Positions 30,947-64,000 of a DNA stretch of 64,000 bases are shown here, one piece after another. How positions within the stretch are numbered: the stretch's first letter is position 1; each line of letters begins with the position of its first letter. The notes beneath the pieces are model-generated. The model saw only the letters and a list, made by a program, of their open reading frames with translations. It was not told where the DNA came from and did not search any database. Made by a program: the position numbers and the translations under genes. Location of the stretch: the IMG/VR virus record IMGVR_UViG_3300035698_022190, positions 146,209 to 210,208 of that record. One strand, written 5' to 3'.

Positions 30947-32302
30947 ATGTCGTCTAAAGCCAAAGGCATTCCCGATAGATCTAAGTATCTACAAATGCCG
31001 GTTACTAAGAATAATGAGTGGCTTGGCAATATTCAGTCCCACAAGGCAAACAAGGCAGGGCAACATTTTGATTTACGTATAAATGATCCAAAAACTTCGC
31101 ATGCATATTCTTGAGCACTTCGTAGTTTACCAGAACCTGGACAAAAGGTATTAGCCGTTGAACAGCCCACTCATACAAAATCTTATATGGGGTGGTCTGG
31201 TATAATAGAATCCGGCTACGGGGCAGGGACAGTAGAAAGTACTTTTCATGATAAAATAGAAGTGCTAGAATCTGGCACAGATAGAGTCACCTTTAATATG
31301 TATGGACCGGGACAAAAAGTACATCGTTATATGCTTATGCGGATGGATAACAAAGATTGGCTACTTTATAACTATACTGCTACAACAGACACACCATTAA
31401 TACCAAAACATAAACGTTCTTATAAAGAAATATCATATGATAAAGTTGAAACTAATAGAGATAATGAGTGGATGGCGCCCAAGATGGACGGTGCCCACAA
31501 TACAGTTCTTCTTAGACCTGAAAAACGCATTGACGTATATTCTCATAGGCTAAGTAAAAAAGGCTCAGAAAGAATTGATCATTCATATAGAACAGATTTA
31601 TATAAAACGAAAAGTCCTAAGGAATTAGGAGTAACGGTAGTTCGTTCTGAATTATATTTACCAAAACAAGATAGTTCTATAGTAGGAAGTTTGTTGACTC
31701 CTACTGTTTGGAAATCAAGACTAAAGCAAAGAACTCTTGGTAAATTACAAAATGTTATTTTTGATGTGGATCGTTATAAAGGACAAGACATGACTGACGC
31801 GCCATACAGTGAAAAATGGCGAATATTGCAAAAAATTAATAAACTTATTCCTGCGCTACATTTACCCGAACTGGCTAAAACTCCAGAGCAAAAAAAAGCT
31901 ATGTTAAGATCGGTTCGTGATAATACCCATTCAGAAACAGGCGAAGGTATTGTTATTTATAAACTTAACAAATCTATTCCTATCAAAGCAAAAGCTGTAA
32001 GTGACTACGATGTAAAAATAACCGGAACTTATCCAGCACTTCCTGGATCAAAATATGATGGAAAAGCTGTTGGAGGTTTCACGGCTACCCCAGAGTATGA
32101 CAGCAATGTTGAGATTAGAGTGGGTACTGGCTTAAAAGATGTAGAACGAATGGAAGTTTATAAGCATCCTGAAAAATATATAGGCCAATGGGCTAAAGTC
32201 CAGGGACTAAAAAAAACGAAATCGGGCAAGATTAGAATGCCCGTATATAAAGGACTTCGTTTTGAAAAATATCTTGGCAAATTTTTTAACCAAAAAACAT
32301 AA
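30947..32302 (+). CDS. LigD-type 3'-phosphoesterase fused to ATP-dependent DNA ligase (1 TGA=Trp)
   Basis: HFDLR..YS*A..LP.PG..LAVEQPTH; KMDG adenylation motif, EGIV, OB domain VGTG; TGA at 31112. Confidence 0.85.
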
Positions 32303-32754
32303 TGGAAAACATAGCAAACTACTTTTATTCTGAAATGCTTGCAAATATGATATCACAAGCACGATATACTGTTAAAAGCTTAAAAAAACAGAACTATTTA
32401 TATTCCCCATCTTCGGCGGCGTGGGAGTATCAAACTATTCACTTTGGAGGGATGCGCGGATCTGGCCATAACACAGCTATGGAAGCCTTGTCCCATGTTT
32501 TTAAATGTGAAATTGTTTGCGCAATCGCCGCACATACCAAGCTTTTTCCTGAGGCAAAAAAAGGTACGTCAATTACTTGGCTTGACCATGTGCTACAGCC
32601 GGGAACTCATAGACATAAATTTGAAGTAGTGTTTCTAGATAACTGGGCCACCATGATGTTACAGGCATACCCAGATGTGGAAAGCATGATTCACCAACTA
32701 GAGCCCATATATAGAGCATACACAAATAGCACTATTTTTGTATTAATACACTAG
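32302..32754 (+). CDS. Hypothetical protein with degenerate P-loop
   Basis: GGMRGSGHNT, VVFLD. Confidence 0.55.
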   Translation: MENIANYFYSEMLANMISQARYTVKSLKKQNYLYSPSSAAWEYQTIHFGGMRGSGHNTAMEALSHVFKCEIVCAIAAHTKLFPEAKKGTSITWLDHVLQPGTHRHKFEVVFLDNWATMMLQAYPDVESMIHQLEPIYRAYTNSTIFVLIH

Positions 32755-32773
32755 AGGATGAAATAAAAAATAT

Positions 32774-34936
32774 ATGAGTTTTAATTTAAATAAAGTTGAG
32801 TATAAAGACCATTTAAAAGGGTTTTGAGCGGGCAATTTAATAGCTAATTGGAAAGCGTTGCCGAGCGAGTTCAAGAAATTTGAGCCACCATTTTTTACCA
32901 CAAAGGATGATATACTGTTTCCCTATAACTGGCAAGTGAACTGGAAAGCTGACGACGACAATGATATTGAGTATATGTATTTACACTTAATGAATAAACA
33001 TAAAACATTGCAGCTGTCAGCAAATCAAATTCGAGATGGATGATTAGAACATATAAACGATGATTATTTGTGGGTTGCCAATCAGCGTGCTTATGATTTA
33101 ATGAAAACAGGCATGGTTCCCCCAAGCACAGGAATGGCGTGTAATAATGAGTTTTCTGACAAGATTGATGCCCAAATAGAGTGTGAAATCTTTGGTGTAT
33201 TTTATCCCGATGAGCCACACAAGGCATTAAATATAGCAGATTTGCCAATTAGAACAGTTGGCGAAGGTATTGCTTATCACGCCTCAAGAGTTTATGTGGC
33301 GATGTATTCTTTAGCTTTAAACAGTCAATCGCCATTAGAGTTGTTAGATAAAGCAATCCAATATGGGAATGATAAAACAAGTGAGATTTATAATTCAATA
33401 AGAGTAAGTTTCAAAAATAGTTATACTTGGGAAGAAGCGAGAGATTTCTTTTATGAAGAATATCAAAAGAACAACTCTGACTACGATTGGGCGTTAGATG
33501 CTGAGATTAATTTTGGTGCTGTTCTAATTGCTCTGTTATGGGGTGAAATGGATTACAAAAAGACTGTGATGATTGGTACTCTTGCAGGATGGGATTCAGA
33601 TTGTAATGCAGTTACAGCAGGGTCATTGGTTGGATATGTAAAAGGATTCAAACATCTTGAACAGGTTTTTGGTAGAAAGATTTATACTAATTATAATATA
33701 GCAAGAACTCGTAAGAATATGCCTGATTATTTACCTAATGTAAGTGGCGCTGAAGATACTTTTGAGTTCATGGCAGATAGAATGATTAATTTTATGACAA
33801 TAGATAATGGAGATAAAATGAAAAAAGTAATATTTTGTATTGGAGACAGTAGAACTGCTGCAGGACACAGTCCTTGGTACACACCAGCTCCCGATAGTTA
33901 TCCTTTTTTCTTACAGCAAGAAATGGGGAATGGGTATGATGTTAGACAGTGGGGACAAGGTGGCACTTCTGTAACTAAGGGAGTCCATTGGAGTATCTGG
34001 GATGGTTTTGAAGGTAACCCGGCTTTGTCTTTTCAGCATTTAAAAAATGTTCAGCAAATAGAGAGTTTCTGGGATAAAGCTTTTCCTGGAATGCCTTTTA
34101 ATGAAACTGAGATAATTAACATCGTCAATTATGGTACTAATGATGCGATGAATAATAGATGGCCTACAACTAAAGCGAACTTTAAAAGGGATTACAAAGC
34201 ATTAACTTGGCTACTAAAAGGTAAAACATACCTTTGTTTACCACAGCCAACTTTTGGTACAGGTGAAGACCATGTTTATAACTCGTCAATTTTAGAAGTG
34301 CACGCATTAATAAATGAGCTTTCCAAAGAAACAGGATGCCCCACAATAGACTTTTATACAGGTACAACAGCTAGTATGTCGCCTGTTGATGGGCTACATT
34401 TCGGAGCATTAGGCAATATGCACTTTGCTAATGCAGCAAGTAAAGAATTAAAAAATGACTCACCAATAATACCACCAATAATCGGAGAACCTATGGAAAC
34501 ACCAATAATTAAAATTGAAAATAATAAACTATCCGTAACTAATTTTGATCCAACTGTTACAAATTATAGCTGGCAGTATAGTAAAACATTGCATGGTTAT
34601 GATGAATGGCTTGGTTTTGGAACAGAAATGGACATTAAGCCGAGATTCCAAATAGATGGACATTATTTCTTTTGTTACGCAAGAGATAATACCACTGATG
34701 GTAGAACACCTGATTCTAAGAGGGTGATATATAAATCAGGCGCCCCGGCCCCAATATGCGGATGCACAGATTCGGAAGCAACAAATTATAATCCAAACGC
34801 CACAGAAGATGACGGCACATGCATATACTCTAACCCCACCAATAATGATAAAGTTGTTTTAGAGATGCGAGCACATCTTTTAACTGCTACAAATGCATTA
34901 ACTGCCATTGAAGACTTATTTGATGATATTGAGTAA
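32774..34936 (+). CDS. ADP-ribosylglycohydrolase fused to SGNH/GDSL hydrolase (2 TGA=Trp)
   Basis: GF*AG..IANW, ADDDNDIEY, IRDG*L, GWDSDCN; IGDS, YGTNDA, DGLH; GCTD..A.NYNP.AT.DDG.C repeat. Confidence 0.8.
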
Positions 34937-34949: not shown

Positions 34950-35225
34950 ATGATGAAAAAAATAGCTAATAGATTTGTGCCCTCAAGAGATTTCGTTAAG
35001 CTTTGAAACAGGCGTAGTCGTATTGCAGCACAGCTCACAAAACAGGTAGCTGAAATAGCAACTAAACGAGTAGCACCTGGACCAGAGCCATTGGGAAAAT
35101 TTATGAAAGCAATAAAAGTTCCAAGCCAACGAATCACAAAAGTTGATCAAGATATTTCTAAAGTCCAGTCAATAATAAATAAAAAAAGATATTCAAAATT
35201 ATACAAACAGTATCATGGAGCTTAA
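34950..35225 (+). CDS. Small basic protein with KKIA leader (1 TGA=Trp)
   Basis: AGGAG RBS; open to TAA under TGA read-through. Confidence 0.6.
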
Positions 35226-35568
35226 ATTAAAATATATTTTCACTACCGAGACAGATCGTCAAGAGGGGCTTATGCAGAAGGCCCCTCTTGCACAGAACGA
35301 AGGTGCTTTATTTATCTGGCAAAAGCCCGTTGTAAATTATGTTTGGAATAAGAACGTATCCTTTCCAATAGATGTCGGATTTTTTTCTGAATCACACTCT
35401 CTTATTAATATAGAGCATTTAAGAGCTTATCAAGAAAGTCCAGTATATTCAGTTGGGCGCTATCAATTTATCTTAGAAACCCCTCATAGTTGGTTTATTA
35501 AACACAAAATAAAAGTGTTTACCAACTTAATTAAACTTTTAGACCCTATACCCAAAGAATTATCTTGA
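35215..35568 (+). CDS. DUF192 family protein
   Basis: GLM...L....G.LF, NVSFPIDVGF, ILE...WF; would extend to 35586 if TGA is read. Confidence 0.75.
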   Translation: MELKLKYIFTTETDRQEGLMQKAPLAQNEGALFIWQKPVVNYVWNKNVSFPIDVGFFSESHSLINIEHLRAYQESPVYSVGRYQFILETPHSWFIKHKIKVFTNLIKLLDPIPKELS

Positions 35569-35598
35569 CAAACTGCTAAAAATTAACTATCTTAAAGT

Positions 35599-36096
35599 AT
35601 GTTAAATCCTGCGACTGATAAGACACAACCTTCCGAATATACGAAGGCCCTCAAACTAAAAAATAAACTTGATATTGCTATACGCAATAAAGAGCTCCAA
35701 AACATTTCTCATAATGTTCGAGCAATGGTTGATGGAAAAGAAAGTAACAAATCTTTTGCTAAGAGTGTTAGCAAACATACCGCCACAGGTGCTGTAGTAG
35801 GCGCTGCCGCTGGTGGGGTTGCCTCTGTTCCCCTATCTTTAATATCAAAAGGTTTTAGAGGTTTAAGACATAAGCCCATTGGCATGGCTACAGTGGCTGC
35901 CTCAACTGCAATCGGTGCAGTTGCGCTTGGCGGAAATCGCCTTAGACAGGGAAAACGTCCAATTCAAATTAGACAACACGACGCAGATTTAATGCATTTA
36001 AAAGGCTTAAGACAAGAATTAAAAAACACAGAATCACCTGCTTATACAGCATATGTTAAACATAACAGAAAGTTGAGCAGGACTGTGGATGTTTAA
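35599..36096 (+). CDS. Basic protein with Gly/Ala hydrophobic hairpin (putative virion cargo)
   Basis: TATGAVVGAAAGG; leaderless start. Confidence 0.65.
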   Translation: MLNPATDKTQPSEYTKALKLKNKLDIAIRNKELQNISHNVRAMVDGKESNKSFAKSVSKHTATGAVVGAAAGGVASVPLSLISKGFRGLRHKPIGMATVAASTAIGAVALGGNRLRQGKRPIQIRQHDADLMHLKGLRQELKNTESPAYTAYVKHNRKLSRTVDV

Positions 36097-36556
36097 AGTC
36101 AATGCTGTTTCACATAAAAATTTTTCAGAAATACAAAAAGAAGTTTTAGATCAAACGATTGTTAAGCTCGAAACGGTATTTAATAGTCAAAAATTTAAAG
36201 AACAAGTAGTAAACTTTAAATGTCCTTTAACAGGAAAGGAAGAATTTCTTGAAAATTTAGGACATTCAAATGAACAGTTGTATGACAAGTTGATGAGCGG
36301 AGCCACACTCCACGTAGAAATTGATACCGACCTACCCAGTCGCAGGGTTATCGGATATACATATCCCAAAGGGGTTACAATTTATACATATAAGTGGTGG
36401 TTTGATAAATATGCAAAAAAATATTATGCTGCTCATTTAGCGCATGAATGGTGCCATAAACTAAACTTTGACCATACAGCACGTCGTAAGAAACGGTGGA
36501 AGTATACTGTACCATATATGATAGGAAATATAGTAGAAGAGTTAACTAATGAGTAA
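36089..36556 (+). CDS. Zinc metallopeptidase (HExxH)
   Basis: IGYT, LAHEWCHKLNFDH, VPY.IG. Confidence 0.75.
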   Translation: MFKVNAVSHKNFSEIQKEVLDQTIVKLETVFNSQKFKEQVVNFKCPLTGKEEFLENLGHSNEQLYDKLMSGATLHVEIDTDLPSRRVIGYTYPKGVTIYTYKWWFDKYAKKYYAAHLAHEWCHKLNFDHTARRKKRWKYTVPYMIGNIVEELTNE

Positions 36557-39200
36557 AGCCAAAGATATTTGATCTAAGACTAAAAAACAAGTTGGACAGA
36601 AAGTCGAACAGATTGAGAAAAAAGATATAGCTATTGGTACTGGTGTAGGACTTGGCGCTGGGACAATAGCCCAGAAAATAGACAAACCTAAACGTTTGTT
36701 TGCCGGTGGAGTCCATCAAGGTAAAAAATTAGTCTACTATAATCCTTTTGTAGCAAAGTATCCTTTTAAAATACAAGGTAAGTTCAAAGAGACAAAGCGA
36801 AAAATTAATCGAGCAGCTACATTTATTTCCAGAAAAAAGGCTCAGATTAGACACCCCGCAATTCCCGTTTACACAGATTCCCAAAAAATACCAAAAGGCT
36901 CGGTCGCTTATAATTACTCTGAATTAGACCTTAAGGGCGGGGGCCCAAATAGGGCTCCTGTGCATAAAAGTGTATCTGTAATTAATAATATAAAAGATTC
37001 TTCTACCTTTACTGATAAGTATAATTTACAATCTAGTAAGGCTTTTTATTCACGGGGTATTTCAACAAAAACAGAAATGTTTGATGACTATGTATCACGC
37101 AAAGTAGGGAAACCCATAAAAGATATTAGCCAGCTAGAGGCTCAAAAAGTCTTTGAAAGTGCCTCTCACAAATTTGTAAAACCACGAGTCGGAACCATGA
37201 GCCAAGGAACTTATACTTCTGGTGAGAAACTTTTAACTGAATTTGATGAGACCATCGGAAAGGGTACTAACAAAAAATCAGGTAAACCAGCTTTCTTAAA
37301 GGTTTGAAATAATAAAAAGAATTTTATTGTACAAGACAAATTAGATTTTGCTGGCAAAAAAGAATATCGTATCCATGTGGGACCAGAAGGTGTAGAGCAG
37401 ACCGGTTTTAAACGTTTTGGAAGAAGAAACCCTGTAAATGCCTTTAAACATGTGGATCAAGAATTTTTAGGAAATCTTGGGGCTGCTCATAAAGAATTTC
37501 TGAAAACTAAGGGTGAGTCAAAGAACATGGTTATTGGTTATGACGTCGCGCAGACCAAAAAAGGATGGAAGGTGGTCGAAGGTAATATTATGTCAGACTT
37601 TAAAGCAGGCGGACACTGAAGAGCAAAAAATTTAAAATTTAGACATGCTGTAACAGGAAAAGGTCTTACAGGTAAAGCTATAGGTGTAGGAGCTTTAGCA
37701 GCTGTAGGCGTAACAGCATACTCTGCATTAAAGAAAGAGGCTGCAAAGAAACGGAAAGTTTCCGGAGAAACAAAAGCCACGGCATTAATGGCAGGCGGAG
37801 CAACCACTGCTGGAACATATATTCATCTTCGTAAGCCTGATTATCACACATCAAGAAACATAGCCGCACTTCAAAGAGAATCAAAAGGTAAAGTTACTTC
37901 TTTACATTATAATACTTCAAGTAAATTCCATCAATTAGCTAATAAGGCTGTATTTGGTGGATCTATGAAACATCTTGATTCTCATAAGCTGTGGTCCCAA
38001 AGAAAAGGACCTTGAAAAAAAGGAAAGAAAAAACAAATTGAAGGTACATTATATCTTAGATCACAGAAGGGGACTGCAACAAAATGAGTACCAGATGTGG
38101 GAATTAATTTAGATCCGGGACAGCACGCAAAAAAGGGCGGCAAAGGATCAGCCTGAGGTCGTTTAATAAAAAAAGAAACATTATCTGATACCCCTGCATT
38201 GAAAGGTCTGGCAGTTGAGAATTGAGATGCTGATAGGTTTCTTGAATCGAGAGGTACTACTCGAAAAGAATTTTTGTCAAAAACAAACGATGAGTGGGAA
38301 CCGCTATTTAAAAAGTGGCATAAAGAAAAGCCAGTATTTGTTAAACAAGACAGTTCCAATATGAAGGGAGTATATGGTGATTTAGATAAAATTAGACGAC
38401 ACCAAATGAAAGACATTGGGGGAAAGAAAGTATATACCCCAATCAAAACTGACAATTATGATATTCTTAGAAAGCAATTAACTAACCCACCTAAGGCAGT
38501 AAAAGGGGCTGTTAATAGAGGCACTTTCTTTTTTGGCGCAAAGATTCCAAAGGAAATGAAAGAATATCGTGTTCACACTCTTAATGGAAAGTTTTTAAAT
38601 GCTTCTCCTCGTTGGGGTGACAAAGCTCTAACAAAATGAGAAACCAATCCAGCTAAAATTAATGAAAAATCCATTCGACAGCTTGAAGCTGGTGTAACAA
38701 AGCTCCAATATGAAGAGCTCCCCAAAGAACTAAAAAAGCATAGACAGCATAAAAGATTTAAAACCTCGCCTGCTCGAATTCGTCACAAATATTTAGGGAT
38801 GGACGTTTTTATAGACCCATCTGGAAAGCATGCTCCAAAAATAGTAGAAATTAATTCTAGTCCTATGACTGCTGGTATGCCTATGACTAATTTAAGGAAG
38901 GATCAGGTAGAAGATATATTACAACAAAATAAAAGAATTAAAGGGCCTTTACCTGATACTAAAAGCAAAGCTTATAAAAAAATTGTGCGAAAGCCAAAAA
39001 ACTTCTTACTTTTAACGAAATCTCGTTTAGGTAAAATGAAAGCACAGCATAGTGAAGCAAAAGCTTTTTATACTTCTTTGACTGGAAGAAAAGAATTTAG
39101 AAATGTAGCGGTAGCCAAAGCTGGCGTAGCTGGTTTAGCAACAATTGGATTAACAGGAGCGGCAATTCATGGCCTCAAAAAAAGAAAAAAGAACAGATAA
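36549..39200 (+). CDS. 883-aa polyprotein with two RimK-like ATP-grasp domains (8 TGA=Trp)
   Basis: Five track ORFs share one frame separated only by TGA; FVKP..G, FIVQ, KEYRIH, GYDV..VVEGN; FVKQ, KEYRVH, GMDV..IVEIN. Confidence 0.75.
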
Positions 39201-40359
39201 TTTAATTTCTGCAGCAGGCGGCACGGGTGTGGGGACAGCTGCATACTTAGGTAGCAGGTCTATTGACATCTCAAATCACTCAGATGCGACACAGCAGCGT
39301 TTAATTTCTGCTCATAAAAAACGTGGTACAGGCATTGGTTTTAGAAATAAGCCTAGAGCCCTGCTAGCTAAAGTTATATATGAGCCTAAATTTAAGTATT
39401 ATACTTTAAAGTCACAGGTACGGAAAAACCCACCAGGGGTAATGTTTAGTAAATTACTTACTAAAACTGAGGGCGGTATTACTATTAATGGCCCTAAGTT
39501 ATTTAAATCTTATCGCAAAACTTTAAGTAATAAAAAGAATTACCAAAACCTTCCGCATATTGGAAAATATTTTCCGAAAACAATGGAAATGACGGATGCC
39601 TTTGCAGAAGTTGGTATTTCAAATGTATCTAAAACCACCGATAAACAGCTTTTAAAAGGCGTAGCTGATATTGAAAAGAAACACGGTAAGTTCTTTTATA
39701 AACAAAAACCAGACTTTGATAGAAATCTAGGGCACTCAATGCGTGGAGCATACGGCCATAGTGAGGATATACCTAAGGGTGTAAAACGTACAGATATTAC
39801 TCTTTGAGACCGCGTACGAAATAAAGATGTAAGATATAAAAAAGCTCCTGACATATTAAAAACAATTAGAAAAGAAGCCCCTAATGTACTAATCAGCAAT
39901 GATTGGGGAACAGGACACAAAGAATACCGTTTAGAAATTTTGGGAGATAAGCCCACACTTCTACACCGTTTTGGTCGTAAAAAAGGAATGAAGGTTAAGA
40001 TAGACAAAGAATTAAGTGAGTCTGGAAGAGCCGGGTTAAACACATTTATTGGTGACTATAAAAAATATTTAACCAACAAAGGGGCATACAAGCATCTAGA
40101 TGAAGTTCCTTTTGTTGGCGCAGATATAATTATTCCTAAGAAAGGAAGGGTAAAAGGAGTAGAGTTACAATGGAATTCAGGTTTCCCCTTCCATGCTAAG
40201 GCAATGAAACATATGGTATCTAAACCCTATGGATCAACCGGACGCATGGCCGAATATATAACGGGACGTATTTCACATCCAAAGGCATTAGCTATAGGAG
40301 GTACTGCAGCCTTAGCAGTTGGCGGCGGAATCAAAGCGTGGAGAAGACGTAACGATTAA
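39169..40359 (+). CDS. Third ATP-grasp protein (1 TGA=Trp)
   Basis: FPKT, FFYK, KEYRLE, VGADI..VELQ..SG; hydrophobic termini. Confidence 0.7.
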
Positions 40360-41246
40360 TGAAAACTTTAGTTAAATTAGGTTTTGAGGCTGCTAAACCA
40401 CGTACGCGTCTTAGACGTGTCACGGATGTAGGCACAGCGGCCTTTGCTGGGGCCTTAACGTCACTTGTACCCGGAGTCCCTATAGGAACCGGTATAGTAG
40501 CTGGGATAGCTCCTAAGGGCCATAAAACAGAAGTGGCGGCTAAAACAACAGCTGGAGGTATACTTGCCTCAGCACCCGCAGCAATGTATGGTGTGCATAG
40601 GTTAGCTAAAGATGTCAGTAATACTAATAAAGCTGATTATATGCGCTTAATAGATCGCGGACAAGAATTATATAAAGATGTAAAGACCGGGAAAGCAGGT
40701 AAGTGAAAAACGTTAAAGTATATGATGCGTCGAAGTAAAGGGGCAACTAAGAAAATGTATGCAGCCAACATTGCCTTAGGAACAATAGGAACTGGGCTAT
40801 CATATGCTGCAGCAACAAAAAATTATTATAAAAAAGCAGAACTAACTAAGCTTGGTTTCCATCCTGAGTCTTTTACGCAACCATCTCATGAAAAAGATCA
40901 GGCCTTTCTAAATTCTTTTTCGCGTGCGGGGATTAGTGGCAAAACAAGAAAAACTTTAAATAATCCACTGACTTGGGCTTTAGGTGGTATAAGTTTATTT
41001 ATGAATCATAAAAAACGTTCAGATAATCCAGAGTCAATGTGGCCTTATTTAACTGGTGGTTTGTTAGCAGCAATATCAATAAAAAGATGAAGCAACGCAA
41101 GCAAAAGAGAAAAACAAAAATTTGTAAAAGAATATAATGCTACAATGGGCACCACTTTTACTTTAAAGCATCCTAAGATGCAATCACTTTGGAATATGAC
41201 AAATGCCCATGCAAATAGGGTAGACAGGTTTAAAGGTAATGGCTAA
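40359..41246 (+). CDS. Modular basic/hydrophobic protein with KLG/KKA motifs (2 TGA=Trp)
   Basis: Continuous frame to TAA at 41244. Confidence 0.65.
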
Positions 41247-43059: not shown

Positions 43060-43466
43060 TGAATAAACATGTACAACAAGGATTTACCGCTGCACTTATA
43101 AAAGAGGCAGTAGATACAGTGAATATTTTAGAAAAAGAAGCCCAGAAAAAAAGTAAGGGTGTTGCATCAAGTGCAGCAACGGGCGCAGCAGCTATAGGAA
43201 TTCCTGCAGCAGCAATTATGGCAGGAATAGCTTTTAAAACTAGAAAGGGCATTTTACAAAAAAGTATGAAAGGCTTACAAAACATACGTAAACATACAGC
43301 TCATGGTGGTAAACTACGGGCAACACAAATGGCTGAAAGGTCAACTGCAAAAGCCTTAAAGAGCGAAACTAAAGCACAAGCGTTAGCACTTACAGCTAAA
43401 GCCGGATTAGCTGGTATTGGCGTAGGTGGGGCTGGTGGAGCAGCAATAGGAGCTATAAAAAAATAA
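43059..43466 (+). CDS. Ala/Gly-rich putative virion protein
   Basis: GFTAALIKEA and LEKEA motifs. Confidence 0.65.
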   Translation: MNKHVQQGFTAALIKEAVDTVNILEKEAQKKSKGVASSAATGAAAIGIPAAAIMAGIAFKTRKGILQKSMKGLQNIRKHTAHGGKLRATQMAERSTAKALKSETKAQALALTAKAGLAGIGVGGAGGAAIGAIKK

Positions 43467-45106: not shown

Positions 45107-45108
45107 TA

Positions 45109-50975: not shown

Positions 50976-50984
50976 ATAATCAGT

Positions 50985-56179: not shown

Positions 56180-57076
56180 ATGGAAAACTTATCAGCAAGT
56201 ACTGTTAATGAGCTATTCATCCAGAAATTAGATTCTCCGGATGGATTAGAAAAAGTAGCAATGGAAGGATCTGCCTTTATTAGACAAAAGTTACGTGAAG
56301 TATCTTTTGCAAGAAAGGTTATTCAACCTCAGTATGTAACAAAAGCCGATTTAACGCGTTCAGTTAATCACGATGGTCTTGTAAAGATTGTTGATATTGA
56401 ACCTGATTCAAAAGCTATGACCGTTAACTTCCGTGGTGAACCCGACTGGAACTATATTGAAGGACCTCGTTATGAGATTCCTTTCTTTATGATCAGTTCA
56501 GAGGATTTCCAAAAAACCGAAGAAGAACTATTAGCTTACGAAATGCCTCTAACCGAGGTTATTGAAAAGAACTCAGTATTAGATATTCAAAAAATCGAAG
56601 ACACCTCGTTTTTAGCCCAAGTAGATGCAGCTGTTGAAACAGAAGCCAGCCAACTAGCGGAAGCTTATGGCACAGGTGGAATTATCAACAAAGAGGATTT
56701 CAAAGCTCTATTTGATGTGTTAGATGGTAATGAGTTACGTACCGAAATTATCTTAATGGATACAAAAATGTTTAATCGTCTGTTTTTATATGACGCTACA
56801 ACAGTCGGCGACGGCGTTGGATCAGAAACCCATGTAAATGGTTATTCTTATTCAACATTGTTCGGTCGTAGACTAATTGTATCTAATAAAGTTAGTTTAC
56901 TTGACAATAAAATCTACGGCTTCACAGCCCAAGAATTTATGGGTCAATTCTTAGTATTGAATGATGTAAAATTCTGGATCGAAAAGAAAAAGAATATTAT
57001 CTCATTTGCAGCCTATGAAAGTGTAGGTATGGGAATTGGTAATACCAAGTCCTGTGCTAGACTAACCTTAAGTTAG
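56180..57076 (+). CDS. Major capsid protein (HK97 fold)
   Basis: IRQKLRE.SFARK, IQK.ED..F, YE.VG..IGN; strong RBS; terminator follows. Confidence 0.8.
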   Translation: MENLSASTVNELFIQKLDSPDGLEKVAMEGSAFIRQKLREVSFARKVIQPQYVTKADLTRSVNHDGLVKIVDIEPDSKAMTVNFRGEPDWNYIEGPRYEIPFFMISSEDFQKTEEELLAYEMPLTEVIEKNSVLDIQKIEDTSFLAQVDAAVETEASQLAEAYGTGGIINKEDFKALFDVLDGNELRTEIILMDTKMFNRLFLYDATTVGDGVGSETHVNGYSYSTLFGRRLIVSNKVSLLDNKIYGFTAQEFMGQFLVLNDVKFWIEKKKNIISFAAYESVGMGIGNTKSCARLTLS

Positions 57077-57685: not shown

Positions 57686-58890
57686 TGCTTATTTTAAACA
57701 GCCTTGATATCACATCTTATGATGTAAATAAATTAACTGTAAGTTGGGATCTTGATACCACCCCAGAAGCTTTGTCGGGATATTCTCTGAGTCTTTACAG
57801 ATCTGAAAATCCAGGTATTTCTGGAATTGTTGGTTTTGATTTAGTAGAATCGGGAATTGCTGCAACTACTTATCATTATGATGATTTTTCTGTTTCAGGA
57901 ATATGGGACCCACTAAGAACTTGGTATTATAAGATAAAATTTACAGAACTTGCTACTTTAGAAGAATCTGTACAACCAACTACACCCGCTTTTCGTAAAG
58001 CAACTACCACAGATAGAGCAGCAATTGAAATAGTTAGACGTAAAGGTATTGCCTTAGAAAGATATTCAGGCCGTGACTTTTTTGTTATTAAAAAACGTAC
58101 ATATGGAACACATTGTAGTGAGTGCTGGGATGCTACTTTACAAAGAATTGTAAATGATTCTTGCCCTATTTGTAAGGGTACTGGATGGGTAGACGGATAC
58201 TTTGGATCCATTTACTTAAAAGGAATGCTAAACCCAGCTCCGAAATATAACCAAATTACGATGTTTGGTGAATGGATGCCACACGATGCTTTATTTACGA
58301 TGTTAAATTTTCCGCCTATAAGAACTAGAGATATTATTATAGATGATCGGAACCAGAGGTGGATTGTAAAACAAATTAGAAAAACCGAAAAACTTGGTTA
58401 TACAATTGAACACAACGCACAATGTGCACTAATTTCATTTGACGATCAAATTTATGATTTGGAAAAAGATACTTTAGAAATTGCTTTAGCAGTTTTACAA
58501 ACTGACGTGGTTCAGGCCGCAGACCAACAAAGTGTATATGCGGTTGTGAAACAATTACTAGATAGCTATTGGTATGAATCAGATCAAGGAGAAACGGCCG
58601 TAGCGGTTCAATGGGTAAATAGTTTAAAAAGAGTAATCGGGAGCTACACGACAGCAAATACAGCAACTTTTGAAAATGTCAATATTACTGATATTTTTCA
58701 CAGCTATGGTACTGCAACCAATTTAAGTATGTGGTCTGTTTTTATTAATAGGATGGTAGCTACGAAGCAAACAATTACTTCTATTACAGATTCAGGTTCA
58801 AATATTGTAATAACTTTTAACAGTAATTTAGAATATGATTTAGTATCTGGAGATGAAATTGAGCTTTGGGGGCCAATTGATTCCTTATAA
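57685..58890 (+). CDS. Head closure/neck protein: FN3-like, zinc finger and duplicated C-terminal domain
   Basis: CSECWD..CPICKGTGW..GY; C-terminus paralogous to the next gene. Confidence 0.6.
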   Translation: MLILNSLDITSYDVNKLTVSWDLDTTPEALSGYSLSLYRSENPGISGIVGFDLVESGIAATTYHYDDFSVSGIWDPLRTWYYKIKFTELATLEESVQPTTPAFRKATTTDRAAIEIVRRKGIALERYSGRDFFVIKKRTYGTHCSECWDATLQRIVNDSCPICKGTGWVDGYFGSIYLKGMLNPAPKYNQITMFGEWMPHDALFTMLNFPPIRTRDIIIDDRNQRWIVKQIRKTEKLGYTIEHNAQCALISFDDQIYDLEKDTLEIALAVLQTDVVQAADQQSVYAVVKQLLDSYWYESDQGETAVAVQWVNSLKRVIGSYTTANTATFENVNITDIFHSYGTATNLSMWSVFINRMVATKQTITSITDSGSNIVITFNSNLEYDLVSGDEIELWGPIDSL

Positions 58891-59246
58891 TGCCTGATAA
58901 AATTAAGCATTTATTAGACGTATATTGAGGTAATCCAACAGAACAGGATACTGCAGTTTTAATTGAGTTTGTTGATTATATGACAAAGGCAACAGGCGGT
59001 TATACTAGCGCCGATTCGGCGACTATAGAAACTTATAATATTCATTCAGATTTTCATGTTAATGAAATTGCTTCAGATTTAAATTTATGGCACATAACAG
59101 TTAATAGACTCACCACTTTTAAAAATTGTATTGATTCCATTGCCAATGATGGAACAAATGTGATAATTACTTTTAATAGTAATTTAGGATATGATTTGAT
59201 AGCGGGAGATGAGATTGAACTATGGGGCCCTTTAGTAACAACATAA
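58890..59246 (+). CDS. Paralog of the preceding C-terminal domain (1 TGA=Trp)
   Basis: LLDVY* aligns with LLDSYW; shared ITFNSNL.YDL..GDEIELWGP. Confidence 0.75.
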
Positions 59247-60218: not shown

Positions 60219-60219
60219 T

Positions 60220-63009
60220 ATGAAACATGAACTAAAAACTGCTTATAAAAGTACGAACAAAACTGAACGAAAAATAACTCTAAAATCAGCAGACATATTC
60301 TGTAATTTTTCTTTTATAGGAGGACCTAGAGTAACCTTAGTGGGAACTGGTATTAAAAAGTATAGAGTAACCTTTATAGATTTAGATAAAAATAAAATAG
60401 TGTTTGCTACTGAAATCGCAGCAGGAGAATGGGCATCCGCTAATACAAAATATTTTGTAAATTGGAAGATTGATGTATACGACGGTAGTACGTTAATTGA
60501 TTCGCATACTTTAAATTTAAAAAATAAGAATGTTTATATTCAATTTAATAGTAGTGCTCTTGGAGATACTCTCGCGTGGATTCCTTATATGGACAAATTT
60601 AAAGAAAAACATGACTGTAATTTATTTGTATCTACATTTAAAAATAATTTATTTAATAAACGTTATGTTGACTTTACACTCGTAGAGCCAGGTACACCTG
60701 TTGGGGATATTTATGCTATTTATAATATAGGTGTTTTTAGTGATTTAAATAAATCTAAAGTAGATCCCCGCACAGTTTCTTTACAAAGACTTGCAACAAT
60801 TATTCTTGGTCTCCCAGACGGAGAAGTGCAGGCACGAGTAAACCCTGTTGTGAGCCCCAGACCCATTGAAGAAAAGTATGTTTGTATAGCTCCATATGCA
60901 ACTGCCCAAGCTAAACATTGGAATAATGTTATAGGGTGGCAAGCAGTTGTTAATTATTTAAATAAGAACGGCTATAAAGTACTTCACATATCCAGCCAAG
61001 GAAGCGGTTATATGGATAACCCTAAGATAACAGGAACTGAGTATGTTGGAAACCTTTCATTAAAAGCACTAATGCCTTATATTTATCATGCTGAGGCTGT
61101 AATCGGCGTGAGTTCCGGGTTATCATGGCTCTCTTGGGCTTTAAAGCAAAAAACAATTATGATCTCTGGCTTTACAGAAGCCTGGTATGAGTTTTCTAAA
61201 AATTGTCTTAGAGTAACTGCTCCTAATGTCTGTACCGGGTGTTTTAATGACAAAGAGATTGATTTTGATAAAGGTGACTGGAATTGGTGTCCTAGACATA
61301 AAGGCACAGATAGGCAGTTTGAATGCTCTAAACAAATTGATTTTGTTAAAGTTTTACAAGCTTTTAAGGATCGCCAGAAGCTTACCTTTGAGTTCCCCAA
61401 AGGAAAAGAAAAAGATTTTGAGTATCTTTGGAACGAAATATGGAATAGAAAAGAATATTATCATGAAGAATGTCACATAGAAAAAAACGATGTTGTTGTT
61501 GATATAGGAGCAAACATAGGTGTATTTAGTGCGTGGGCCTTAGATCAAGGTGCTAAGCAGGTCTATTCGGTAGAGCCTGATATGCTTAATTATAAATCAT
61601 TGCTGGAAAACATACCAATAGGTTATAAATCTAATATTGCTATATCAAATAAAACGGGTATAGTAGACTTATATGTTGATGGAACAATAGGCGGTCATTC
61701 TATTCTTACACCACCAGAAGGCCATCCCACACAAACGGGGGACACTTATAAAGTAAAAACAAAAAGTTTAAAAGATTACTTTGCTACAAATAATTTAAAA
61801 CATGTAGACTTTTTAAAAGTGGATACGGAAGGAGCAGAAGTGGATATTCTTGCTGACTTAAATGATCTAGATACAACCATAAATAAATTGGCGCTGGAAT
61901 TCCATCACCCACTACATTCCGATGAAGTTTTTAATTCCTTTATTTCTAATTTAGAAAAATATTTTAATAAAGTTCATTTTAATCGAGGACATTATGAGTC
62001 TTTAGTATCTGCTTGGGATAGAAAAGAAAAGATAAAAATTAAAAGTATGGTGTCTGAAAATGGTCCAGTTTTAGTAGTAGGATCGCCAGCTATGGGCGAT
62101 TCTCTTTGTGCTACACCAGTTTTAAATAAACTATTTAAAGCTTATCAAGAGGTTATAACAGTATTTAGTTATGTCCCTGAGATTTTTACAAATAATCCAA
62201 GGGTAAAAGAGGTTTTTAATTTACATGAATATGAGGGGCAAAAATTGAATGATAAGTTAAGTAAATACCCAAGAAAATATGTGCATGAAACTTTTGTTGA
62301 TATATTTGATTCTAAAAATATGGTACATAACCTAACGGATATTCGACAATACCATGCCTCTTTTTTAGGGTTTTCTTTGCTACCAAATGAAATGACTTGC
62401 AATTTTTATCCTGAAAAAGATAGTAATTTAGATTTACCTGAAAAATATGTAGTACTTCATCCGGCAGTTACTTGGGACTCAAGAACTTGAGGTAGGCAAC
62501 AATGGCAAGAATTAGCTGACACTTTAGCTACCCAAGACATAGCCAGCGTTTTAATTGGAAAGGAAACTTCTGAAATATTGGCCGATAATAAAGGAACTCT
62601 AAATAAACCTTTAATGAGCTTAGATTTAAAAAAGGGCAAGGAGTATATAAATAAAACCTCCCTTTCTGAAACGTGGCACATCTTAAACAAAGCTGTTGCA
62701 GTTGTTACGATGGATTCAGGGATATTACATTTAGCAGGCACAACTAATACCCATATTATACAATTAGGAAGCTCTATTAATCCATTATTAAGAGCTCCAT
62801 ACAGGGGAGGTACACAAAGGTATAAATACTCTTATATACCCGGTAAATGTGATATATTTTGTGGTTCAAATATGTCTTATGGATTGGCAGAACATCAAGA
62901 TATAACAGGGGTTCCACTAATTTCTGAATGTTTAGAAAATAAACCAACATTTGAATGCCATCCGACTGTAAAAAATGTTGTAAATGAACTTAAAAAGGTG
63001 TATATTTAA
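60220..63009 (+). CDS. Autotransporter O-heptosyltransferase (Aah/TibC-like) + FkbM methyltransferase + GT9 domain (1 TGA=Trp)
   Basis: ALGDTLAW, SSGLSWL.W, C.GC..W.WCP..FECS; DIGANIG, LKVDTEGAE; MGD, WDSRT*, DSGILHLA. Confidence 0.85.
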
Positions 63010-63390
63010 ATGAAGATAGAAATTTCAAACGGAGAGCTAGTTGATAAAGTTTGTATTTTAAAAATTAAGCTAAAAAATATTAAAGATCCTGATAAATTAA
63101 TTAATATTCAAAAAGAGTTCGATATGCTATCGAGTAAAATGATTTCCTTTTTACCTATGAATGCTTTTCAAAAAGAACTTATAGATCTAGAGAAAGTTAA
63201 TGAAGATTTATGGGTGATTGAAGATAAACTCCGTGTTAAAGAAAAAGAACAAGAATTTGATCAAGAGTTTACTGAGTTAGCGCGCTCAGTTTATTTTACT
63301 AATGATCGTCGTTCTGATGTTAAAAAGAAGATAAACCTAATAACCAAATCAGAACTTGTAGAAGAAAAAAGTTACCAAAAATATAATTAG
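63010..63390 (+). CDS. DUF6165-like protein
   Basis: S.GELVDK..IL.IK, N..LW.IED..R, ARSVY.TND.R, EEKSY. Confidence 0.8.
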   Translation: MKIEISNGELVDKVCILKIKLKNIKDPDKLINIQKEFDMLSSKMISFLPMNAFQKELIDLEKVNEDLWVIEDKLRVKEKEQEFDQEFTELARSVYFTNDRRSDVKKKINLITKSELVEEKSYQKYN

Positions 63391-63398
63391 GAGATTTT

Positions 63399-64000
63399 AT
63401 GACACTTCCCAGAGCTGCACAGTTAAATATTGAAGTGCTGACGCACACTGAAGGTGATGCGGCATACAGCCCAAAAGATAATTTTGCTGGCCCTACTGCG
63501 CCCGTAGACCCACAAGATGGTTGAGAATGGTGGGATAGTGCTGAAGAAAAATTAAAAGTTTATAATGCCACAGACGTCCAATGGATACCTGTGGCTTCAA
63601 TATTTGTAGGAGAAGATCCACCTAATTTACCAAATGAAGGTGATTTATGATGGGACCCCGAGGACATATTAGGTGTTGGTAGTGGAACATCAGGAACTGA
63701 TGGTTCATCCGGTATTGGTGGTGGAGACGGCACAGACGGATCATCTGGCACTTCTGGAACATCGGGAACATCGGGAACATCCGGAACATCCGCCACAGAC
63801 GGAACATCCGCAACAGACGGAACATCAGGAACAAATGGCACATCCGGAACAGATGGAACTTCCGGAACAGATGGAACTTCCGGAACTTCAGGAACATCAG
63901 GAACATCGGGAACATCGGGAACATCCGCCACAGACGGAACATCAGGAACATCGGGAACATCCGCTACAGATGGGACATCAGGAACATCAGGAACATCCGC
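63399..64000 (+). CDS. Tail-fibre-like protein with Gly-Thr-Ser/Asp collagen-like repeat, 3'-truncated (2 TGA=Trp)
   Basis: GGAG RBS; P.DG*EWWD and EGDL*WD; GTS/GTD/ATD triplets to window end. Confidence 0.8.

What the first reader, a model, noticed from the sequence alone, without database searches (positions are those of the whole stretch)
30947..64000. Late genes read TGA as tryptophan
Seen: 43 in-frame TGAs in 17 plus-strand genes by my count. Reading through them joins fragmented ORFs into full proteins ending at TAA/TAG that abut their neighbours. Two internal paralog pairs fix the amino acid: YS*A (31112) vs YSWS in the 44019 paralog, and LLDVY* (58926) vs LLDSYW in the 57685 protein. 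Family motifs also expect Trp (IRDG*L, FMG*WLSEG, EMIAD*, SRT*, GDL*WD). Plus-strand overlaps use TAATG rather than ATGA. Known: stop-codon reassignment in phage late genes exists, and TAG->Gln is the commoner type.
Basis: partly seen in the sequence, partly recalled or inferred. Interest (0 to 1): 0.9.

Follow-up and report, generated by a model that had tools for sequence, protein, structure and literature searches.

The report
Jumbo phage reads TGA as tryptophan
The late (virion and packaging) genes of this 210-kb salt-lake phage use the stop codon TGA as a tryptophan codon while its early genes still stop at TGA; this trick is already known in phages, but here the likely decoder is an odd phage tRNA with two anticodon-like arms.

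Summary
From 30947 to the window end, 34 plus-strand genes hold 41 in-frame TGAs in 17 genes. None has an in-frame TAA or TAG, and all 33 complete genes end in TAA or TAG. In relatives the codon opposite a window TGA is mostly TGG (233) or TGA (40). In 111 distant cellular ADP-ribosylglycohydrolases two TGA sites are Trp in 103/103 and 108/109. Cys, Ser and Gly are nearly absent. Four independent assemblies keep TGA.

The window is the last 64 kb of a 210-kb phage genome. Its minus-strand genes use TGA as a stop (19 genes, 16 ATGA overlaps) and never as sense. A complete sister genome with no tRNA(UCA) has TGG at these sites. TGA-to-Trp recoding of phage late genes is published, so this is a new member of a known kind.

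One thing may be new. The genome's 98-nt tRNA(UCA) derives from tRNA-Trp and carries a covarying extra arm whose loop copies the Trp anticodon loop (U-CCA-A). Amber-suppressor tRNAs in other phages show the parallel: a CUA arm plus a Gln-type CUG arm.

The parts
30947..32302 (+). LigD-phosphoesterase-like N-terminus plus ATP-dependent DNA ligase. TGA at 31112. First recoded gene in the window.
   Evidence: PHROG 114, Pfam PF01068/PF14743. TGA faces W of the paralog at 44019. Relatives: TGG 3, TGA 1.
32774..34936 (+). ADP-ribosylglycohydrolase plus GDSL lipase. TGA at 32825 and 33041.
   Evidence: Pfam PF03747, PF13472. 111 distant homologs: W 103/103 and W 108/109 at the two sites.
35215..35586 (+). 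DUF192 protein. TGA at 35566.
   Evidence: Pfam PF02643. Gene model. No homolog column available.
36053..36556 (+). Unknown protein. TGA at 36074.
   Evidence: Gene model. No homolog column.
36549..39200 (+). 883-aa unknown protein with 8 TGAs (36570, 37305, 37617, 38013, 38085, 38154, 38223, 38637).
   Evidence: One 831-aa homolog (P0114) aligns over residues 27-865, E=4e-131, across seven TGAs. This proves one continuous protein. Residues opposite are L, V, E, V, gap, G, Y, i.e. variable positions that say nothing about the amino acid.
39169..40359 (+). Unknown protein. TGA at 39805.
   Evidence: Gene model.
40359..41246 (+). Unknown protein. TGA at 40704 and 41088. TAATG overlap with the previous gene.
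41239..42048 (+). Unknown protein with 5 TGAs (41374, 41539, 41680, 41701, 41899).
   Evidence: Relatives: 41899 TGG 6/6, 41680 TGG 4/6, 41374 TGG 1 and TGA 1.
42954..43466 (+). Unknown ORF. TGA at 43038. It overlaps the end of 42100-43059, so the start is uncertain.
43692..43988 (+). Small protein. TGA at 43929.
   Evidence: Relatives: TGG 12/13.
45040..45927 (+). Unknown protein. TGA at 45550 and 45652.
   Evidence: Relatives: TGG 17 and TGA 4 of 23; TGG 17 and TGA 6 of 23.
47215..49884 (+). Large terminase subunit, 889 aa, with an insert of about 360 aa. Five of its 8 TGAs (48130, 48148, 48211, 48301, 48517) lie in the insert; 48958, 49150 and 49633 lie in the conserved core.
   Evidence: PHROG 675, Pfam PF05876. 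Relatives: 48958 TGG 30 and TGA 8 of 39; 49150 TGG 37 and TGA 4 of 41; 49633 TGG 31 and TGA 4 of 41.
49947..50975 (+). Unknown protein. TGA at 50343, a variable hydrophobic column.
   Evidence: Relatives: TTA 11, ATA 5, TTT 4 and others, TGA 1.
51471..54371 (+). 966-aa protein of the head module that carries a Hint/LAGLIDADG intein. TGA at 52206, 53961 and 54291.
   Evidence: Pfam PF05203, PF14528. Relatives: 53961 TGG 45 and TGA 2 of 49; 52206 TGG 6 and TGA 1 of 10.
56180..57076 (+). Major capsid protein. No TGA. Used to fetch 67 related loci.
   Evidence: PHROG 2522..
58890..59246 (+). Paralog of the C-terminus of the 57685-58890 protein. TGA at 58926.
   Evidence: blastp E=4e-34, TGA opposite W. 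Relatives: TGG 2/2.
60220..63009 (+). Glycosyltransferase-9 plus FkbM methyltransferase fusion. TGA at 62488.
   Evidence: Pfam PF05050, PF01075 on both sides of the TGA. Relative: TGG 1/1.
63399..64000 (+). Collagen-repeat protein that runs off the contig end. TGA at 63522 and 63648.
   Evidence: Pfam PF01391. Relatives: 63522 TGG 3/6.
8552..19256 (+). Plus-strand block (methyltransferase, two sulfotransferases, unknowns) with no TGA at all, neither sense nor stop. It reads the same under either code.
   Evidence: 0 TGA against 37 TGG. At the late-gene TGA share of 24% the chance of none is about 4e-5. All stops are TAA or TAG. Pfam.
570..8357 (-). Minus-strand genes (includes RNase HII) read in the standard code. 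Part of the early-type set that uses TGA as a stop, with an ATGA overlap at 1364.
19362..27661 (-). Minus-strand gene block without in-frame TGA. ATGA overlap at 25427.

Best explanation
The window is the last 64 kb of a 210,208-bp phage genome from saline waters that uses two genetic codes. Minus-strand (early-type) genes are written in the standard code, with TGA as one of the stops. Plus-strand virion, packaging and associated genes use TGA as a tryptophan codon: 24% of Trp codons in the window's late genes, and about 187 TGA sites genome-wide. The likely decoder is a phage-encoded 98-nt tRNA with anticodon UCA at genome position 65786-65883, about 80 kb upstream of the window. It derives from tRNA-Trp (A1-U72, G2-C71, G3-C70, discriminator G73) and would be charged by the host tryptophanyl-tRNA synthetase. 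Once it accumulates, ribosomes read through TGA in late messages, so late proteins cannot be completed before the switch. Shown here: the in-frame TGAs, their Trp identity, the strand and module split, the tRNA and its co-occurrence with recoding. Inferred: the timing, the charging enzyme, and that this tRNA rather than a host factor does the decoding.
For: 1) 41 in-frame TGAs, no in-frame TAA or TAG, and all stops TAA or TAG in 34 genes.
2) Codons opposite TGA in relatives: TGG 233, TGA 40, and Cys 0, Ser 2, Gly 1.
3) Two sites are W in 103/103 and 108/109 distant cellular homologs.
4) Window TGG faces TGA 194 times in relatives.
5) A single 831-aa homolog aligns across seven TGAs of one gene.
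6) Independent assemblies keep TGA.
7) Minus-strand genes stop at TAA 97, TAG 25 and TGA 19 times. They have 16 ATGA overlaps against 1 on the plus strand. Where minus-strand genes end in TAG here, relatives have TGA (4) or TAA (3) at the same place.
8) In relatives G002 and G003, TGA stands at Trp positions only in plus-strand genes: 55 TGA and 111 TGG there, against 0 of 162 aligned TGG/TGA codons in minus-strand genes.
9) The complete sister genome G001 has no tRNA(UCA), no TGA at 93 aligned Trp positions, and TGG opposite 22 of 33 G000 TGAs. The near-complete recoded genomes G000, G002 and G003 all carry the tRNA.
10) The tRNA's acceptor stem, G73 and T arm resemble the phages' own tRNA-Trp(CCA).
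11) The mechanism matches the published model for TGA-recoded phages (Borges et al. preprint). In Seki et al., all 13 phage tRNA(UCA) analysed inserted Trp in E. coli extract.
Against: No expression, proteomic or tRNA-charging data exist.
- 15 of the 41 sites have no homolog column.
- At six covered sites relatives carry Leu, Ile, Phe or Tyr rather than Trp (50343, 54291, 48301 and others). In gene 36549-39200 the distant homolog shows L, V, E, G or Y opposite the TGAs. This fits new TGA codons arising from TTA at tolerant hydrophobic sites, but does not prove Trp there.
- The genome has no release factor 1 and no TrpRS, so competition with host RF2 is unexplained.
- The tRNA has a long extra arm and G73, the features seryl-tRNA synthetase uses. 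Mischarging with Ser cannot be excluded from sequence alone.
- The host is unknown.
Confidence: 0.92

Rival explanations
1. The host itself reads TGA as Trp (code 4, as in Mycoplasma), and the phage only mirrors its host. There is no code switch.
For: TGA equals Trp in both cases. Low G+C content (36.7%) is typical of code-4 lineages.
Against: Minus-strand genes stop at TGA 19 times and have 16 ATGA start/stop overlaps against 1 on the plus strand. No TGA stands at 205 aligned Trp positions of minus-strand genes in three relatives. TGA swaps with TAG and TAA at minus-strand gene ends. The phage carries its own tRNA(UCA). Sister phages in the same clade use no sense TGA. The samples are salt-lake and marine.
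Confidence: 0.04
2. TGA is read as selenocysteine or serine, because the tRNA(UCA) looks like tRNA-Sec: long extra arm, G73, and weak Rfam tRNA-Sec matches.
For: ARAGORN labels it SeC. Rfam RF01852 scores 32.5 bits in G000 and 48.5 bits, just above the cut-off of 47, in G003. Seryl-tRNA synthetase recognises a long extra arm plus G73 (PMC7609411).
Against: Homolog columns show Cys 0 and Ser 2 against W 233. Conserved sites are W in 211 of 212 distant homologs. About 187 sites per genome is far beyond selenoprotein use. The acceptor and T stems are 7/5, not 8/5. The acceptor stem is tRNA-Trp-like.
Confidence: 0.02
3. TGA is read as glycine (code 25), as in phages of Gracilibacteria and Absconditabacteria, which do live in saline and marine waters.
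For: Code-25 phages exist (Borges et al. preprint).
Against: Only 1 Gly codon appears among 391 aligned cells opposite TGA. The tRNA has a Trp-type acceptor stem and an extra arm with CCA. Early genes stop at TGA.
Confidence: 0.01
4. The TGAs are true stops. The genes are fragmented pseudogenes, or the TGAs are assembly errors.
For: None beyond the naive table-11 reading.
Against: No in-frame TAA or TAG occurs over 10,627 codons, against about 745 in each of the other two frames. Homologs align straight across the TGAs. Pfam domains continue on both sides of a TGA. Four assemblies agree. The same positions are TGA in several relatives.
Confidence: 0.01
5. TGA stays a stop that is only leakily read through by ordinary tRNA-Trp(CCA). 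It would act as an attenuator of late-gene output rather than a reassigned codon, and the tRNA(UCA) would be irrelevant.
For: The phage also encodes a normal tRNA-Trp(CCA). Near-cognate UGA reading by tRNA-Trp is known (PMC13092985). No RF1 is encoded.
Against: Essential genes carry up to 8 TGAs in the window (terminase) and 32 outside it (the 2,588-aa gene), so leaky read-through would yield almost no full-length protein. In relatives L038 and L067, TGA has replaced TGG at 14/17 and 19/20 aligned Trp positions. Presence of the tRNA(UCA) tracks recoding.
Confidence: 0.04

Closest known systems
TGA-to-Trp recoded phages of gut microbiomes (Jade, Agate and similar clades; Borges et al. preprint 10.1101/2021.08.26.457843)
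   Same: In-frame TGA aligns with Trp. Recoding is concentrated in structural and late modules, while other genes stay in the standard code. A phage-encoded tRNA(UCA) is present. Close relatives use the standard code. G+C is low and TGA stops are depleted. A homing-endonuclease-type insert is rich in TGA, as they report for an Agate intron endonuclease.
   Different: The habitat is salt-lake and marine, not gut. This is a different clade of roughly 205-210-kb phages with a multisubunit RNA-polymerase-like gene. No RF1 or TrpRS operon is present, unlike the two Jade genomes. The suppressor tRNA has a second, CCA-bearing arm that the papers I read do not describe.
TAG-to-Gln recoded Lak megaphages and crAss-like phages (Devoto 2019 PMC6784885; Yutin 2021 PMC7886860; Peters 2022 PMC9523058)
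   Same: The same strategy: a stop codon becomes sense in late genes, with a suppressor tRNA and a standard-code host. Lak phage tRNAs were noted to be oversized, with 'enigmatic introns'.
   Different: A different codon and amino acid. Those phages often encode RF2. TAG is a normal stop here.
Genetic code 4 of Mycoplasmatales and Spiroplasma and their phages
   Same: TGA means Trp and is decoded by a tRNA-Trp with anticodon UCA.
   Different: There the whole host and phage genome uses the code and RF2 is lost. Here only part of the genome does, and TGA remains a stop in the rest.
tRNA-Sec, allo-tRNAs and selC*-type tRNA(UCA) (Mukai et al. 2017, PMC5389517)
   Same: A long extra arm, anticodon UCA and discriminator G73. 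Found in metagenomes and phages.
   Different: Those have 8/5, 8/4 or 9/3 acceptor/T stems and Ser or Cys identity. This tRNA is 7/5 with a Trp-type acceptor stem. Its extra arm has the size and loop sequence of a Trp anticodon arm. The codon means Trp.

Membership tests
Stop-codon-recoded phage, TGA to Trp in late genes | Many in-frame TGAs in otherwise intact, conserved genes. Reading them through restores full-length proteins. | tested here: met
   41 TGAs in 17 genes with no in-frame TAA or TAG. Homologs align across the TGAs.
Stop-codon-recoded phage, TGA to Trp in late genes | Homolog residues opposite TGA are tryptophan. | tested here: met
   W 233 plus TGA 40 of 391 cells. 18 of 24 covered sites have a Trp majority. 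W in 211/212 distant homologs at two further sites. 15 sites have no column.
Stop-codon-recoded phage, TGA to Trp in late genes | Phage-encoded suppressor tRNA with anticodon UCA. | tested here: met
   A 98-nt tRNA(UCA) at genome 65786-65883, outside the window. Orthologs in recoded relatives, absent from standard-code relatives.
Stop-codon-recoded phage, TGA to Trp in late genes | Part of the genome (early genes) and the host keep the standard code. | tested here: met
   Met for the genome: TGA stops, ATGA overlaps and no sense TGA in minus-strand genes. The host is unknown, so its code is inferred only.
Stop-codon-recoded phage, TGA to Trp in late genes | Recoded genes are expressed late. 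| not testable with these tools
   Only gene content supports it: terminase, capsid module, baseplate, virion-type RNA polymerase. No transcript data.
Stop-codon-recoded phage, TGA to Trp in late genes | Accessory code-change genes (RF1, TrpRS). Optional, seen in a few genomes only. | tested here: not met
   No PF00472, PF03462 or PF00579 match in the 210-kb genome. Not required for membership.
Stop-codon-recoded phage, TGA to Trp in late genes | Peptide evidence for Trp at TGA. | not testable with these tools
   No proteomic data.
Selenocysteine recoding | TGA sites align with Cys or Sec in homologs. Few sites per genome. tRNA-Sec with a 13-bp acceptor/T branch. | tested here: not met
   Cys 0. 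About 187 sites. 7/5 stems. Rfam score below the cut-off in this genome.
Genetic code 25 (TGA to Gly) | TGA sites align with Gly. | tested here: not met
   Gly 1 of 391.
Bacterial tRNA-Trp identity set (Giege and Eriani 2023, PMC9976931) | G73. A1-U72. G2-C71 and G3-C70. Anticodon C34 C35 A36. | tested here: inconclusive
   G73, A1-U72, G2-C71 and G3-C70 are present in the G000 tRNA. Across the family, position 1-72 is A-U 14, G-U 4, G-C 4. The decoding arm has U34 C35 A36. C34 C35 A36 stands only in the extra arm. Charging was not tested.

The most novel reading that the evidence does not exclude
Phage suppressor tRNAs of this kind carry two anticodon arms. One has the stop anticodon and is used on the ribosome. 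The other is a retained copy of the cognate sense anticodon arm (CCA for Trp, CUG for Gln). The second arm would serve as a built-in handle for the host's anticodon-reading synthetase (TrpRS or GlnRS), so the tRNA is charged correctly even though its decoding anticodon has changed.

Shown:
- The architecture. Twenty distinct tRNA(UCA) of 92-100 nt come from related and unrelated phage contigs.
- All five helices covary, and 16 of 19 full-length distinct sequences have N-U-C-C-A-(A/U)-N in the extra-arm loop.
- Infernal lays the anticodon arm of ordinary tRNA-Trp on that extra arm.
- A search designed as a prediction found amber-suppressor tRNAs with a Gln-type acceptor stem and an extra arm containing CUCUGA.

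Not shown: any function of the extra arm. I found no description of this in the paper library. Earlier papers speak only of 'enigmatic introns' and 'noncanonical structures' in tRNAs of recoded phages.
Probability: 0.35. Interest if true: 0.85.

Novelty: new member of a known kind. Interest (0 to 1): 0.55.

Why it matters
For annotation, this genome and at least 18 related IMG/VR loci are mis-called under table 11. Terminase, the intein-bearing head protein and many others are split into fragments, so the late modules must be called with TGA as Trp.

For biology, it extends late-gene TGA recoding from gut phages to a clade of 205-210-kb phages of saline and marine waters. Recoded and standard-code members are interleaved on the capsid tree (at least 2, most simply 4, changes). 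One branch has replaced almost all TGG by TGA. This makes a good natural series for asking how a code change starts and spreads.

The most valuable by-product is the two-armed suppressor tRNA. If the extra arm is a synthetase handle, it would explain how phages solve the charging problem of suppressor tRNAs without bringing their own synthetase. It would also explain why tRNA finders miss many suppressors in recoded phages, and it would offer a design idea for genetic code expansion.

Tried and rejected
- DNA search of the late region against GenBank phages found nothing useful: three 81-bp hits in Vibrio phages.
- Three two-armed tRNA(UCA) have other extra-arm loops. L095 and L110 have UAUUGAU, which resembles a Gln UUG anticodon loop. 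L102 has another loop. I tried to read the meaning of TGA on those contigs, but the held loci have too few credible in-frame TGAs and homologs. Left unresolved.
- Looking for the host through bacterial genomes that carry the two-armed tRNA gave one Oscillospiraceae MAG contig (L152) with the L089-type tRNA, probably a binned phage. The other hits are high-G+C contigs (L151, L153, L154, L156 and L157; 59-69% G+C) and look like true tRNA-Sec genes. No host for this phage emerged.
- A scan for short-variable-loop tRNA(UCA) with the same flanking pattern found only 2, against 28 long ones. The pattern was derived from this family, so the ratio says nothing about prevalence.
- The MAFFT alignment of the tRNAs was too poor for RNAalifold, which found only two helices. 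I replaced it with a covariance-model alignment, which leans towards the model's structure. The shuffle and slide controls were nevertheless clear.
- A promoter and terminator scan around the tRNA found nothing.
- ORF-cover gains under TAG-as-sense for the amber tRNA contigs are only suggestive, because cover also rises under TGA-as-sense.
- The distant homolog of gene 36549-39200 proves read-through but gives non-Trp residues at variable positions. It is not evidence for the amino acid.

Full report
**What the window is.** The window is bases 146209-210208 of a single 210,208-bp virus contig with 36.7% G+C and no N. Near-identical sequence is held by salt-lake and marine metagenome runs. The genome carries 25 ordinary tRNA genes and a tmRNA on the minus strand at 95-108 kb, plus one 98-nt tRNA with anticodon UCA on the plus strand at 65786-65883. 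The window itself has no tRNA.

**The observation.** Treating only TAA and TAG as stops, the plus strand from 30947 to the window end is an almost gap-free series of 34 genes.
- Seventeen genes contain 41 in-frame TGAs.
- All 33 complete genes end in TAA or TAG.
- Over 10,627 codons the coding frame has TGA 41, TAA 0, TAG 0 and TGG 130. The other two frames have 746 and 742 TAA+TAG.
- The paralog pair 58890/57685 is solid (45% identity, E=4e-34, TGA opposite W). The pair 30947/44019 is weaker (E=6e-5) but also puts the TGA opposite W.
- Contigs assembled independently from four runs reproduce 47215-52214 with no change at its ten TGA codons. Depth is low and one run may be the source sample.

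**Which amino acid.** The major capsid protein (56180-57076) retrieved 67 related IMG/VR loci, and I fetched three whole relatives, G001, G002 and G003. I translated the window genes with X at each TGA, compared them by tblastn, and read the relatives' codon opposite each X.
- 24 of the 41 sites are covered. The cells are W 233, TGA 40, gap 31, L 23, F 20, I 12, Y 8, S 2, G 1 and C 0.
- 18 sites have a TGG/TGA majority, for example 53961 (47/49), 49150 (41/41) and 48958 (38/39).
- The six other covered sites are variable hydrophobic or aromatic columns.
- Conversely, window TGG codons face TGG 876 times and TGA 194 times.
- An independent test used the ADP-ribosylglycohydrolase gene (32774-34936). 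Among 111 distant homologs, many from named bacteria, the residues opposite TGA 32825 and 33041 are W in 103/103 and 108/109. Columns for the gene's TGG codons behave the same way.
- For the 883-aa gene 36549-39200, a single 831-aa homolog aligns across seven of its eight TGAs (E=4e-131). This proves one continuous protein. The residues opposite are L, V, E, V, gap, G and Y at poorly conserved positions, so this gene does not identify the amino acid.
- Fifteen sites remain without any column.
- Selenocysteine, serine and glycine readings are excluded as the intended meaning, because their codons are absent opposite the TGAs.

**Two codes in one genome.** Minus-strand genes end in TAA 97, TAG 25 and TGA 19 times.
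- The frame behind those TGAs closes within 0-41 codons. Behind plus-strand TGAs it stays open for hundreds of codons.
- Start/stop overlaps of the ATGA type number 16 on the minus strand and 1 on the plus strand. TAATG overlaps number 6 and 17. Five of the TAATG overlaps lie in the window's late region: 32300, 40357, 43057, 57683 and 58888.
- Where minus-strand genes end in TAG here, relatives have TGA (4) or TAA (3) at the aligned position.
- In G002 and G003, TGA stands at Trp positions of plus-strand genes (55 TGA against 111 TGG opposite G000 TGG), but at none of the 162 aligned TGG/TGA codons of minus-strand genes.
- Some blocks avoid TGA altogether. Window 8552-19256 (plus strand; methyltransferase and sulfotransferases) has 37 TGG, no TGA and only TAA/TAG stops. 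Genome 7.8-36.4 kb has 35 minus-strand genes and no TGA stop. These blocks read the same under either code.

**What is recoded.** In the window:
- a ligase with a LigD-phosphoesterase-like N-terminus;
- an ADP-ribosylglycohydrolase/GDSL lipase;
- the large terminase, 889 aa with an insert of about 360 aa; seven of its eight TGAs lie between the first ATPase match (residues 34-109) and the later terminase matches (the weak second Pfam ATPase match, from residue 545, and the PHROG 675 terminase match, from residue 651);
- a 966-aa head-module protein with a Hint/LAGLIDADG intein;
- glycosyl- and methyltransferases;
- a collagen-repeat protein.

The capsid protein has no TGA. Elsewhere on the plus strand, a baseplate wedge protein, a 2,019-aa RNA polymerase beta-like protein and a 2,588-aa protein with 32 TGAs are recoded. 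The genome-wide count is about 187 TGA sites. 'Late' is therefore an inference from gene content and strand, not from expression.

**Evolution in the clade.** Among loci with at least 15 aligned Trp positions, 18 use TGA at two or more of them and 23 at none. On a capsid-protein tree the two states are interleaved. The fewest changes are 4, and well-supported branches force at least 2. The window groups with recoded L001 and L002 (SH-aLRT 98), with the standard-code L003 and L004 (=G001) as nearest neighbours. In L038 and L067, TGA has almost replaced TGG (14/17 and 19/20).

**The decoder.** G001 is rated 100% complete. It has no tRNA(UCA) and no TGA at 93 aligned Trp positions, and it has TGG opposite 22 of 33 G000 TGAs.
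- The standard-code relative G004 (89% complete) likewise lacks a long tRNA(UCA), as does G007 (94% complete; its own coding state was not scored). Their best covariance-model hits are ordinary 72-86-nt tRNAs, among them G001's tRNA-Trp.
- The recoded genomes G000, G002 and G003 all have it at a syntenic place.
- No release factor or TrpRS gene is present.
- The tRNA has A1-U72, G2-C71, G3-C70 and G73, the bacterial Trp identity set as listed in PMC9976931, and an encoded CCA end. Its acceptor and T arms resemble the phage's own tRNA-Trp(CCA).

This fits the published model, in which a phage suppressor tRNA charged by host TrpRS switches the cell to the phage's late code (Borges et al. preprint). 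Phage tRNA(UCA) tested in E. coli extract inserted Trp (Seki et al. preprint).

**The unexpected part.** The tRNA is 98 nt because it has a fifth helix between the anticodon arm and the T arm. ARAGORN calls it SeC, and Rfam gives a sub-threshold tRNA-Sec match. I searched IMG/VR with a pattern that fixes only the UCA loop, a long spacer and the T loop. It found 28 loci.
- 27 tRNA(UCA) of 94-100 nt were called, 17 of them distinct.
- About half of the loci are syntenic relatives of this phage. The rest share no detectable protein with it.
- A covariance model built from four sequences realigned 29 of them.
- On that alignment 96% of cells pair. All five helices show changes on both sides, including all six pairs of the extra arm. 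No shuffle of 500 and no slid register comes close. The alignment is fitted to the model, so it leans that way.
- The extra arm is a 5-7-bp stem with, as a rule, a 7-nt loop. In 16 of 19 full-length distinct sequences, and also in G002, the loop reads N-U-C-C-A-(A/U)-N, which is the tRNA-Trp anticodon loop.
- Infernal aligned two ordinary tRNA-Trp(CCA) genes to the model by laying their anticodon arm on this extra arm and deleting the UCA arm.

So the molecule is a tRNA-Trp with two anticodon-type arms, UCA and CCA.

**A test of that reading.** If the extra arm keeps the cognate anticodon for the synthetase, amber suppressors that insert Gln should carry a CUG or UUG arm. I scanned for long tRNA(CUA) without specifying the extra arm.
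- It gave seven distinct tRNA(CUA) of 90-98 nt.
- Five of them, in three sequence groups, have a tRNA-Gln-type acceptor stem (U1-A72 or an unpaired 1-72, G2-C71 and G3-C70 in three of the five, G73 in all five) and an extra arm containing CUCUGA.
- In L284 and L190 that arm folds as a 5-bp stem with the loop CUCUGAC, i.e. U33-CUG-A37.
- The other two are ordinary class II suppressors with A73.
- Their contigs gain ORF cover when TAG is sense, but this is only suggestive.

**What the extra arm does is not shown.** The possibilities I see are these:
- a handle for TrpRS or GlnRS, both of which read the anticodon;
- two alternative stackings, so that one tRNA reads both codons;
- an element that is removed, the 'intron' reading of earlier papers;
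- a target for a modification enzyme.

**Prior description.** Five searches of the paper library, and reading of the most relevant papers, found no description of such an arm. Devoto et al. report oversized Lak phage tRNAs with 'enigmatic introns'. Borges et al. detect suppressors in only 35% of TGA-recoded genomes and suspect noncanonical structures. The library does not hold most subscription papers, so prior description cannot be excluded.

**Verdict.** The phenomenon is published, so the finding is a new member of a known kind, from a new habitat and clade. It is useful mainly for correct annotation and as an evolutionary series. The two-armed suppressor tRNA lies outside the window and is the item that deserves follow-up.

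Noticed in passing
Outside the window: genome 65786-65883 (L068:1787-1884); relatives L083-L111, L080:1161-1258, L152: The tRNA(UCA) has a fifth, covarying arm of anticodon-arm size. Its loop is the tRNA-Trp anticodon loop (N-U-CCA-A-N). It occurs in related and unrelated phage contigs, several of them heavy users of in-frame TGA.
   Followed up: yes
L284, L190, L185, L269, L212 (IMG/VR loci): Amber-suppressor tRNAs (anticodon CUA, 90-98 nt) have a tRNA-Gln-type acceptor stem and an extra arm containing CUCUGA, the Gln CUG anticodon loop. This parallels the UCA/CCA tRNAs.
   Followed up: partly
L095:9791-9884, L110:5111-5204, L102:1866-1962: Three two-armed tRNA(UCA) have a different extra-arm loop. 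UAUUGAU in L095 and L110 resembles a Gln UUG anticodon loop. The meaning of TGA on those contigs could not be determined.
   Followed up: partly
window 51471-54371: The 966-aa head-module gene holds a Hint plus LAGLIDADG homing-endonuclease intein. One of its three TGAs (52206) lies just after the Hint start.
   Followed up: partly
window 47545-48850 (inside the terminase gene 47215-49884): The large terminase has an insert of about 360 aa between ATPase motifs that is present in only about 6 of about 40 relatives. The insert holds five of the gene's eight TGAs, and seven of the eight lie between the first ATPase match and the terminase matches that follow it. No Pfam match, possibly another intein or endonuclease. 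Borges et al. also report TGA enrichment in a homing endonuclease.
   Followed up: partly
window 8552-19256 (+), and genome 7.8-36.4 kb (-): Gene blocks have no TGA at all, neither sense nor stop, so they read the same under both codes. They may be expressed around the switch.
   Followed up: partly
L038, L067 (relatives; capsid identity about 70%): In these relatives TGA has almost replaced TGG at aligned Trp positions (14/17 and 19/20), a far more advanced state than the 24% seen in the window.
   Followed up: partly
Outside the window: genome 95541-95943 (-): A phage-encoded tmRNA (Rfam RF00023, 108.5 bits) sits next to the tRNA cluster. G002 and G003 have one too.
   Followed up: no
G002:115365-115439 and G003:105393-105469: The recoded relatives also carry an ordinary-size tRNA with anticodon CUA (amber suppressor type). 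G000 has none. I did not check whether TAG is also read through there.
   Followed up: no
window 63651-64000, and genome 1-60: The contig begins and ends inside the same collagen-like Gly-X-Y repeat. The assembly probably broke in this repeat, and the last gene continues at the other end of the contig.
   Followed up: no
window 30947-31330 and 44019-44450: There are two copies of a LigD-phosphoesterase-like domain (HFDLR...YSW motif), one fused to the ATP-dependent ligase and one free-standing.
   Followed up: partly
window 28795-29598 (+): A papain-family cysteine protease gene (Pfam PF00112) lies just upstream of the recoded region. It has no TGA.
   Followed up: no
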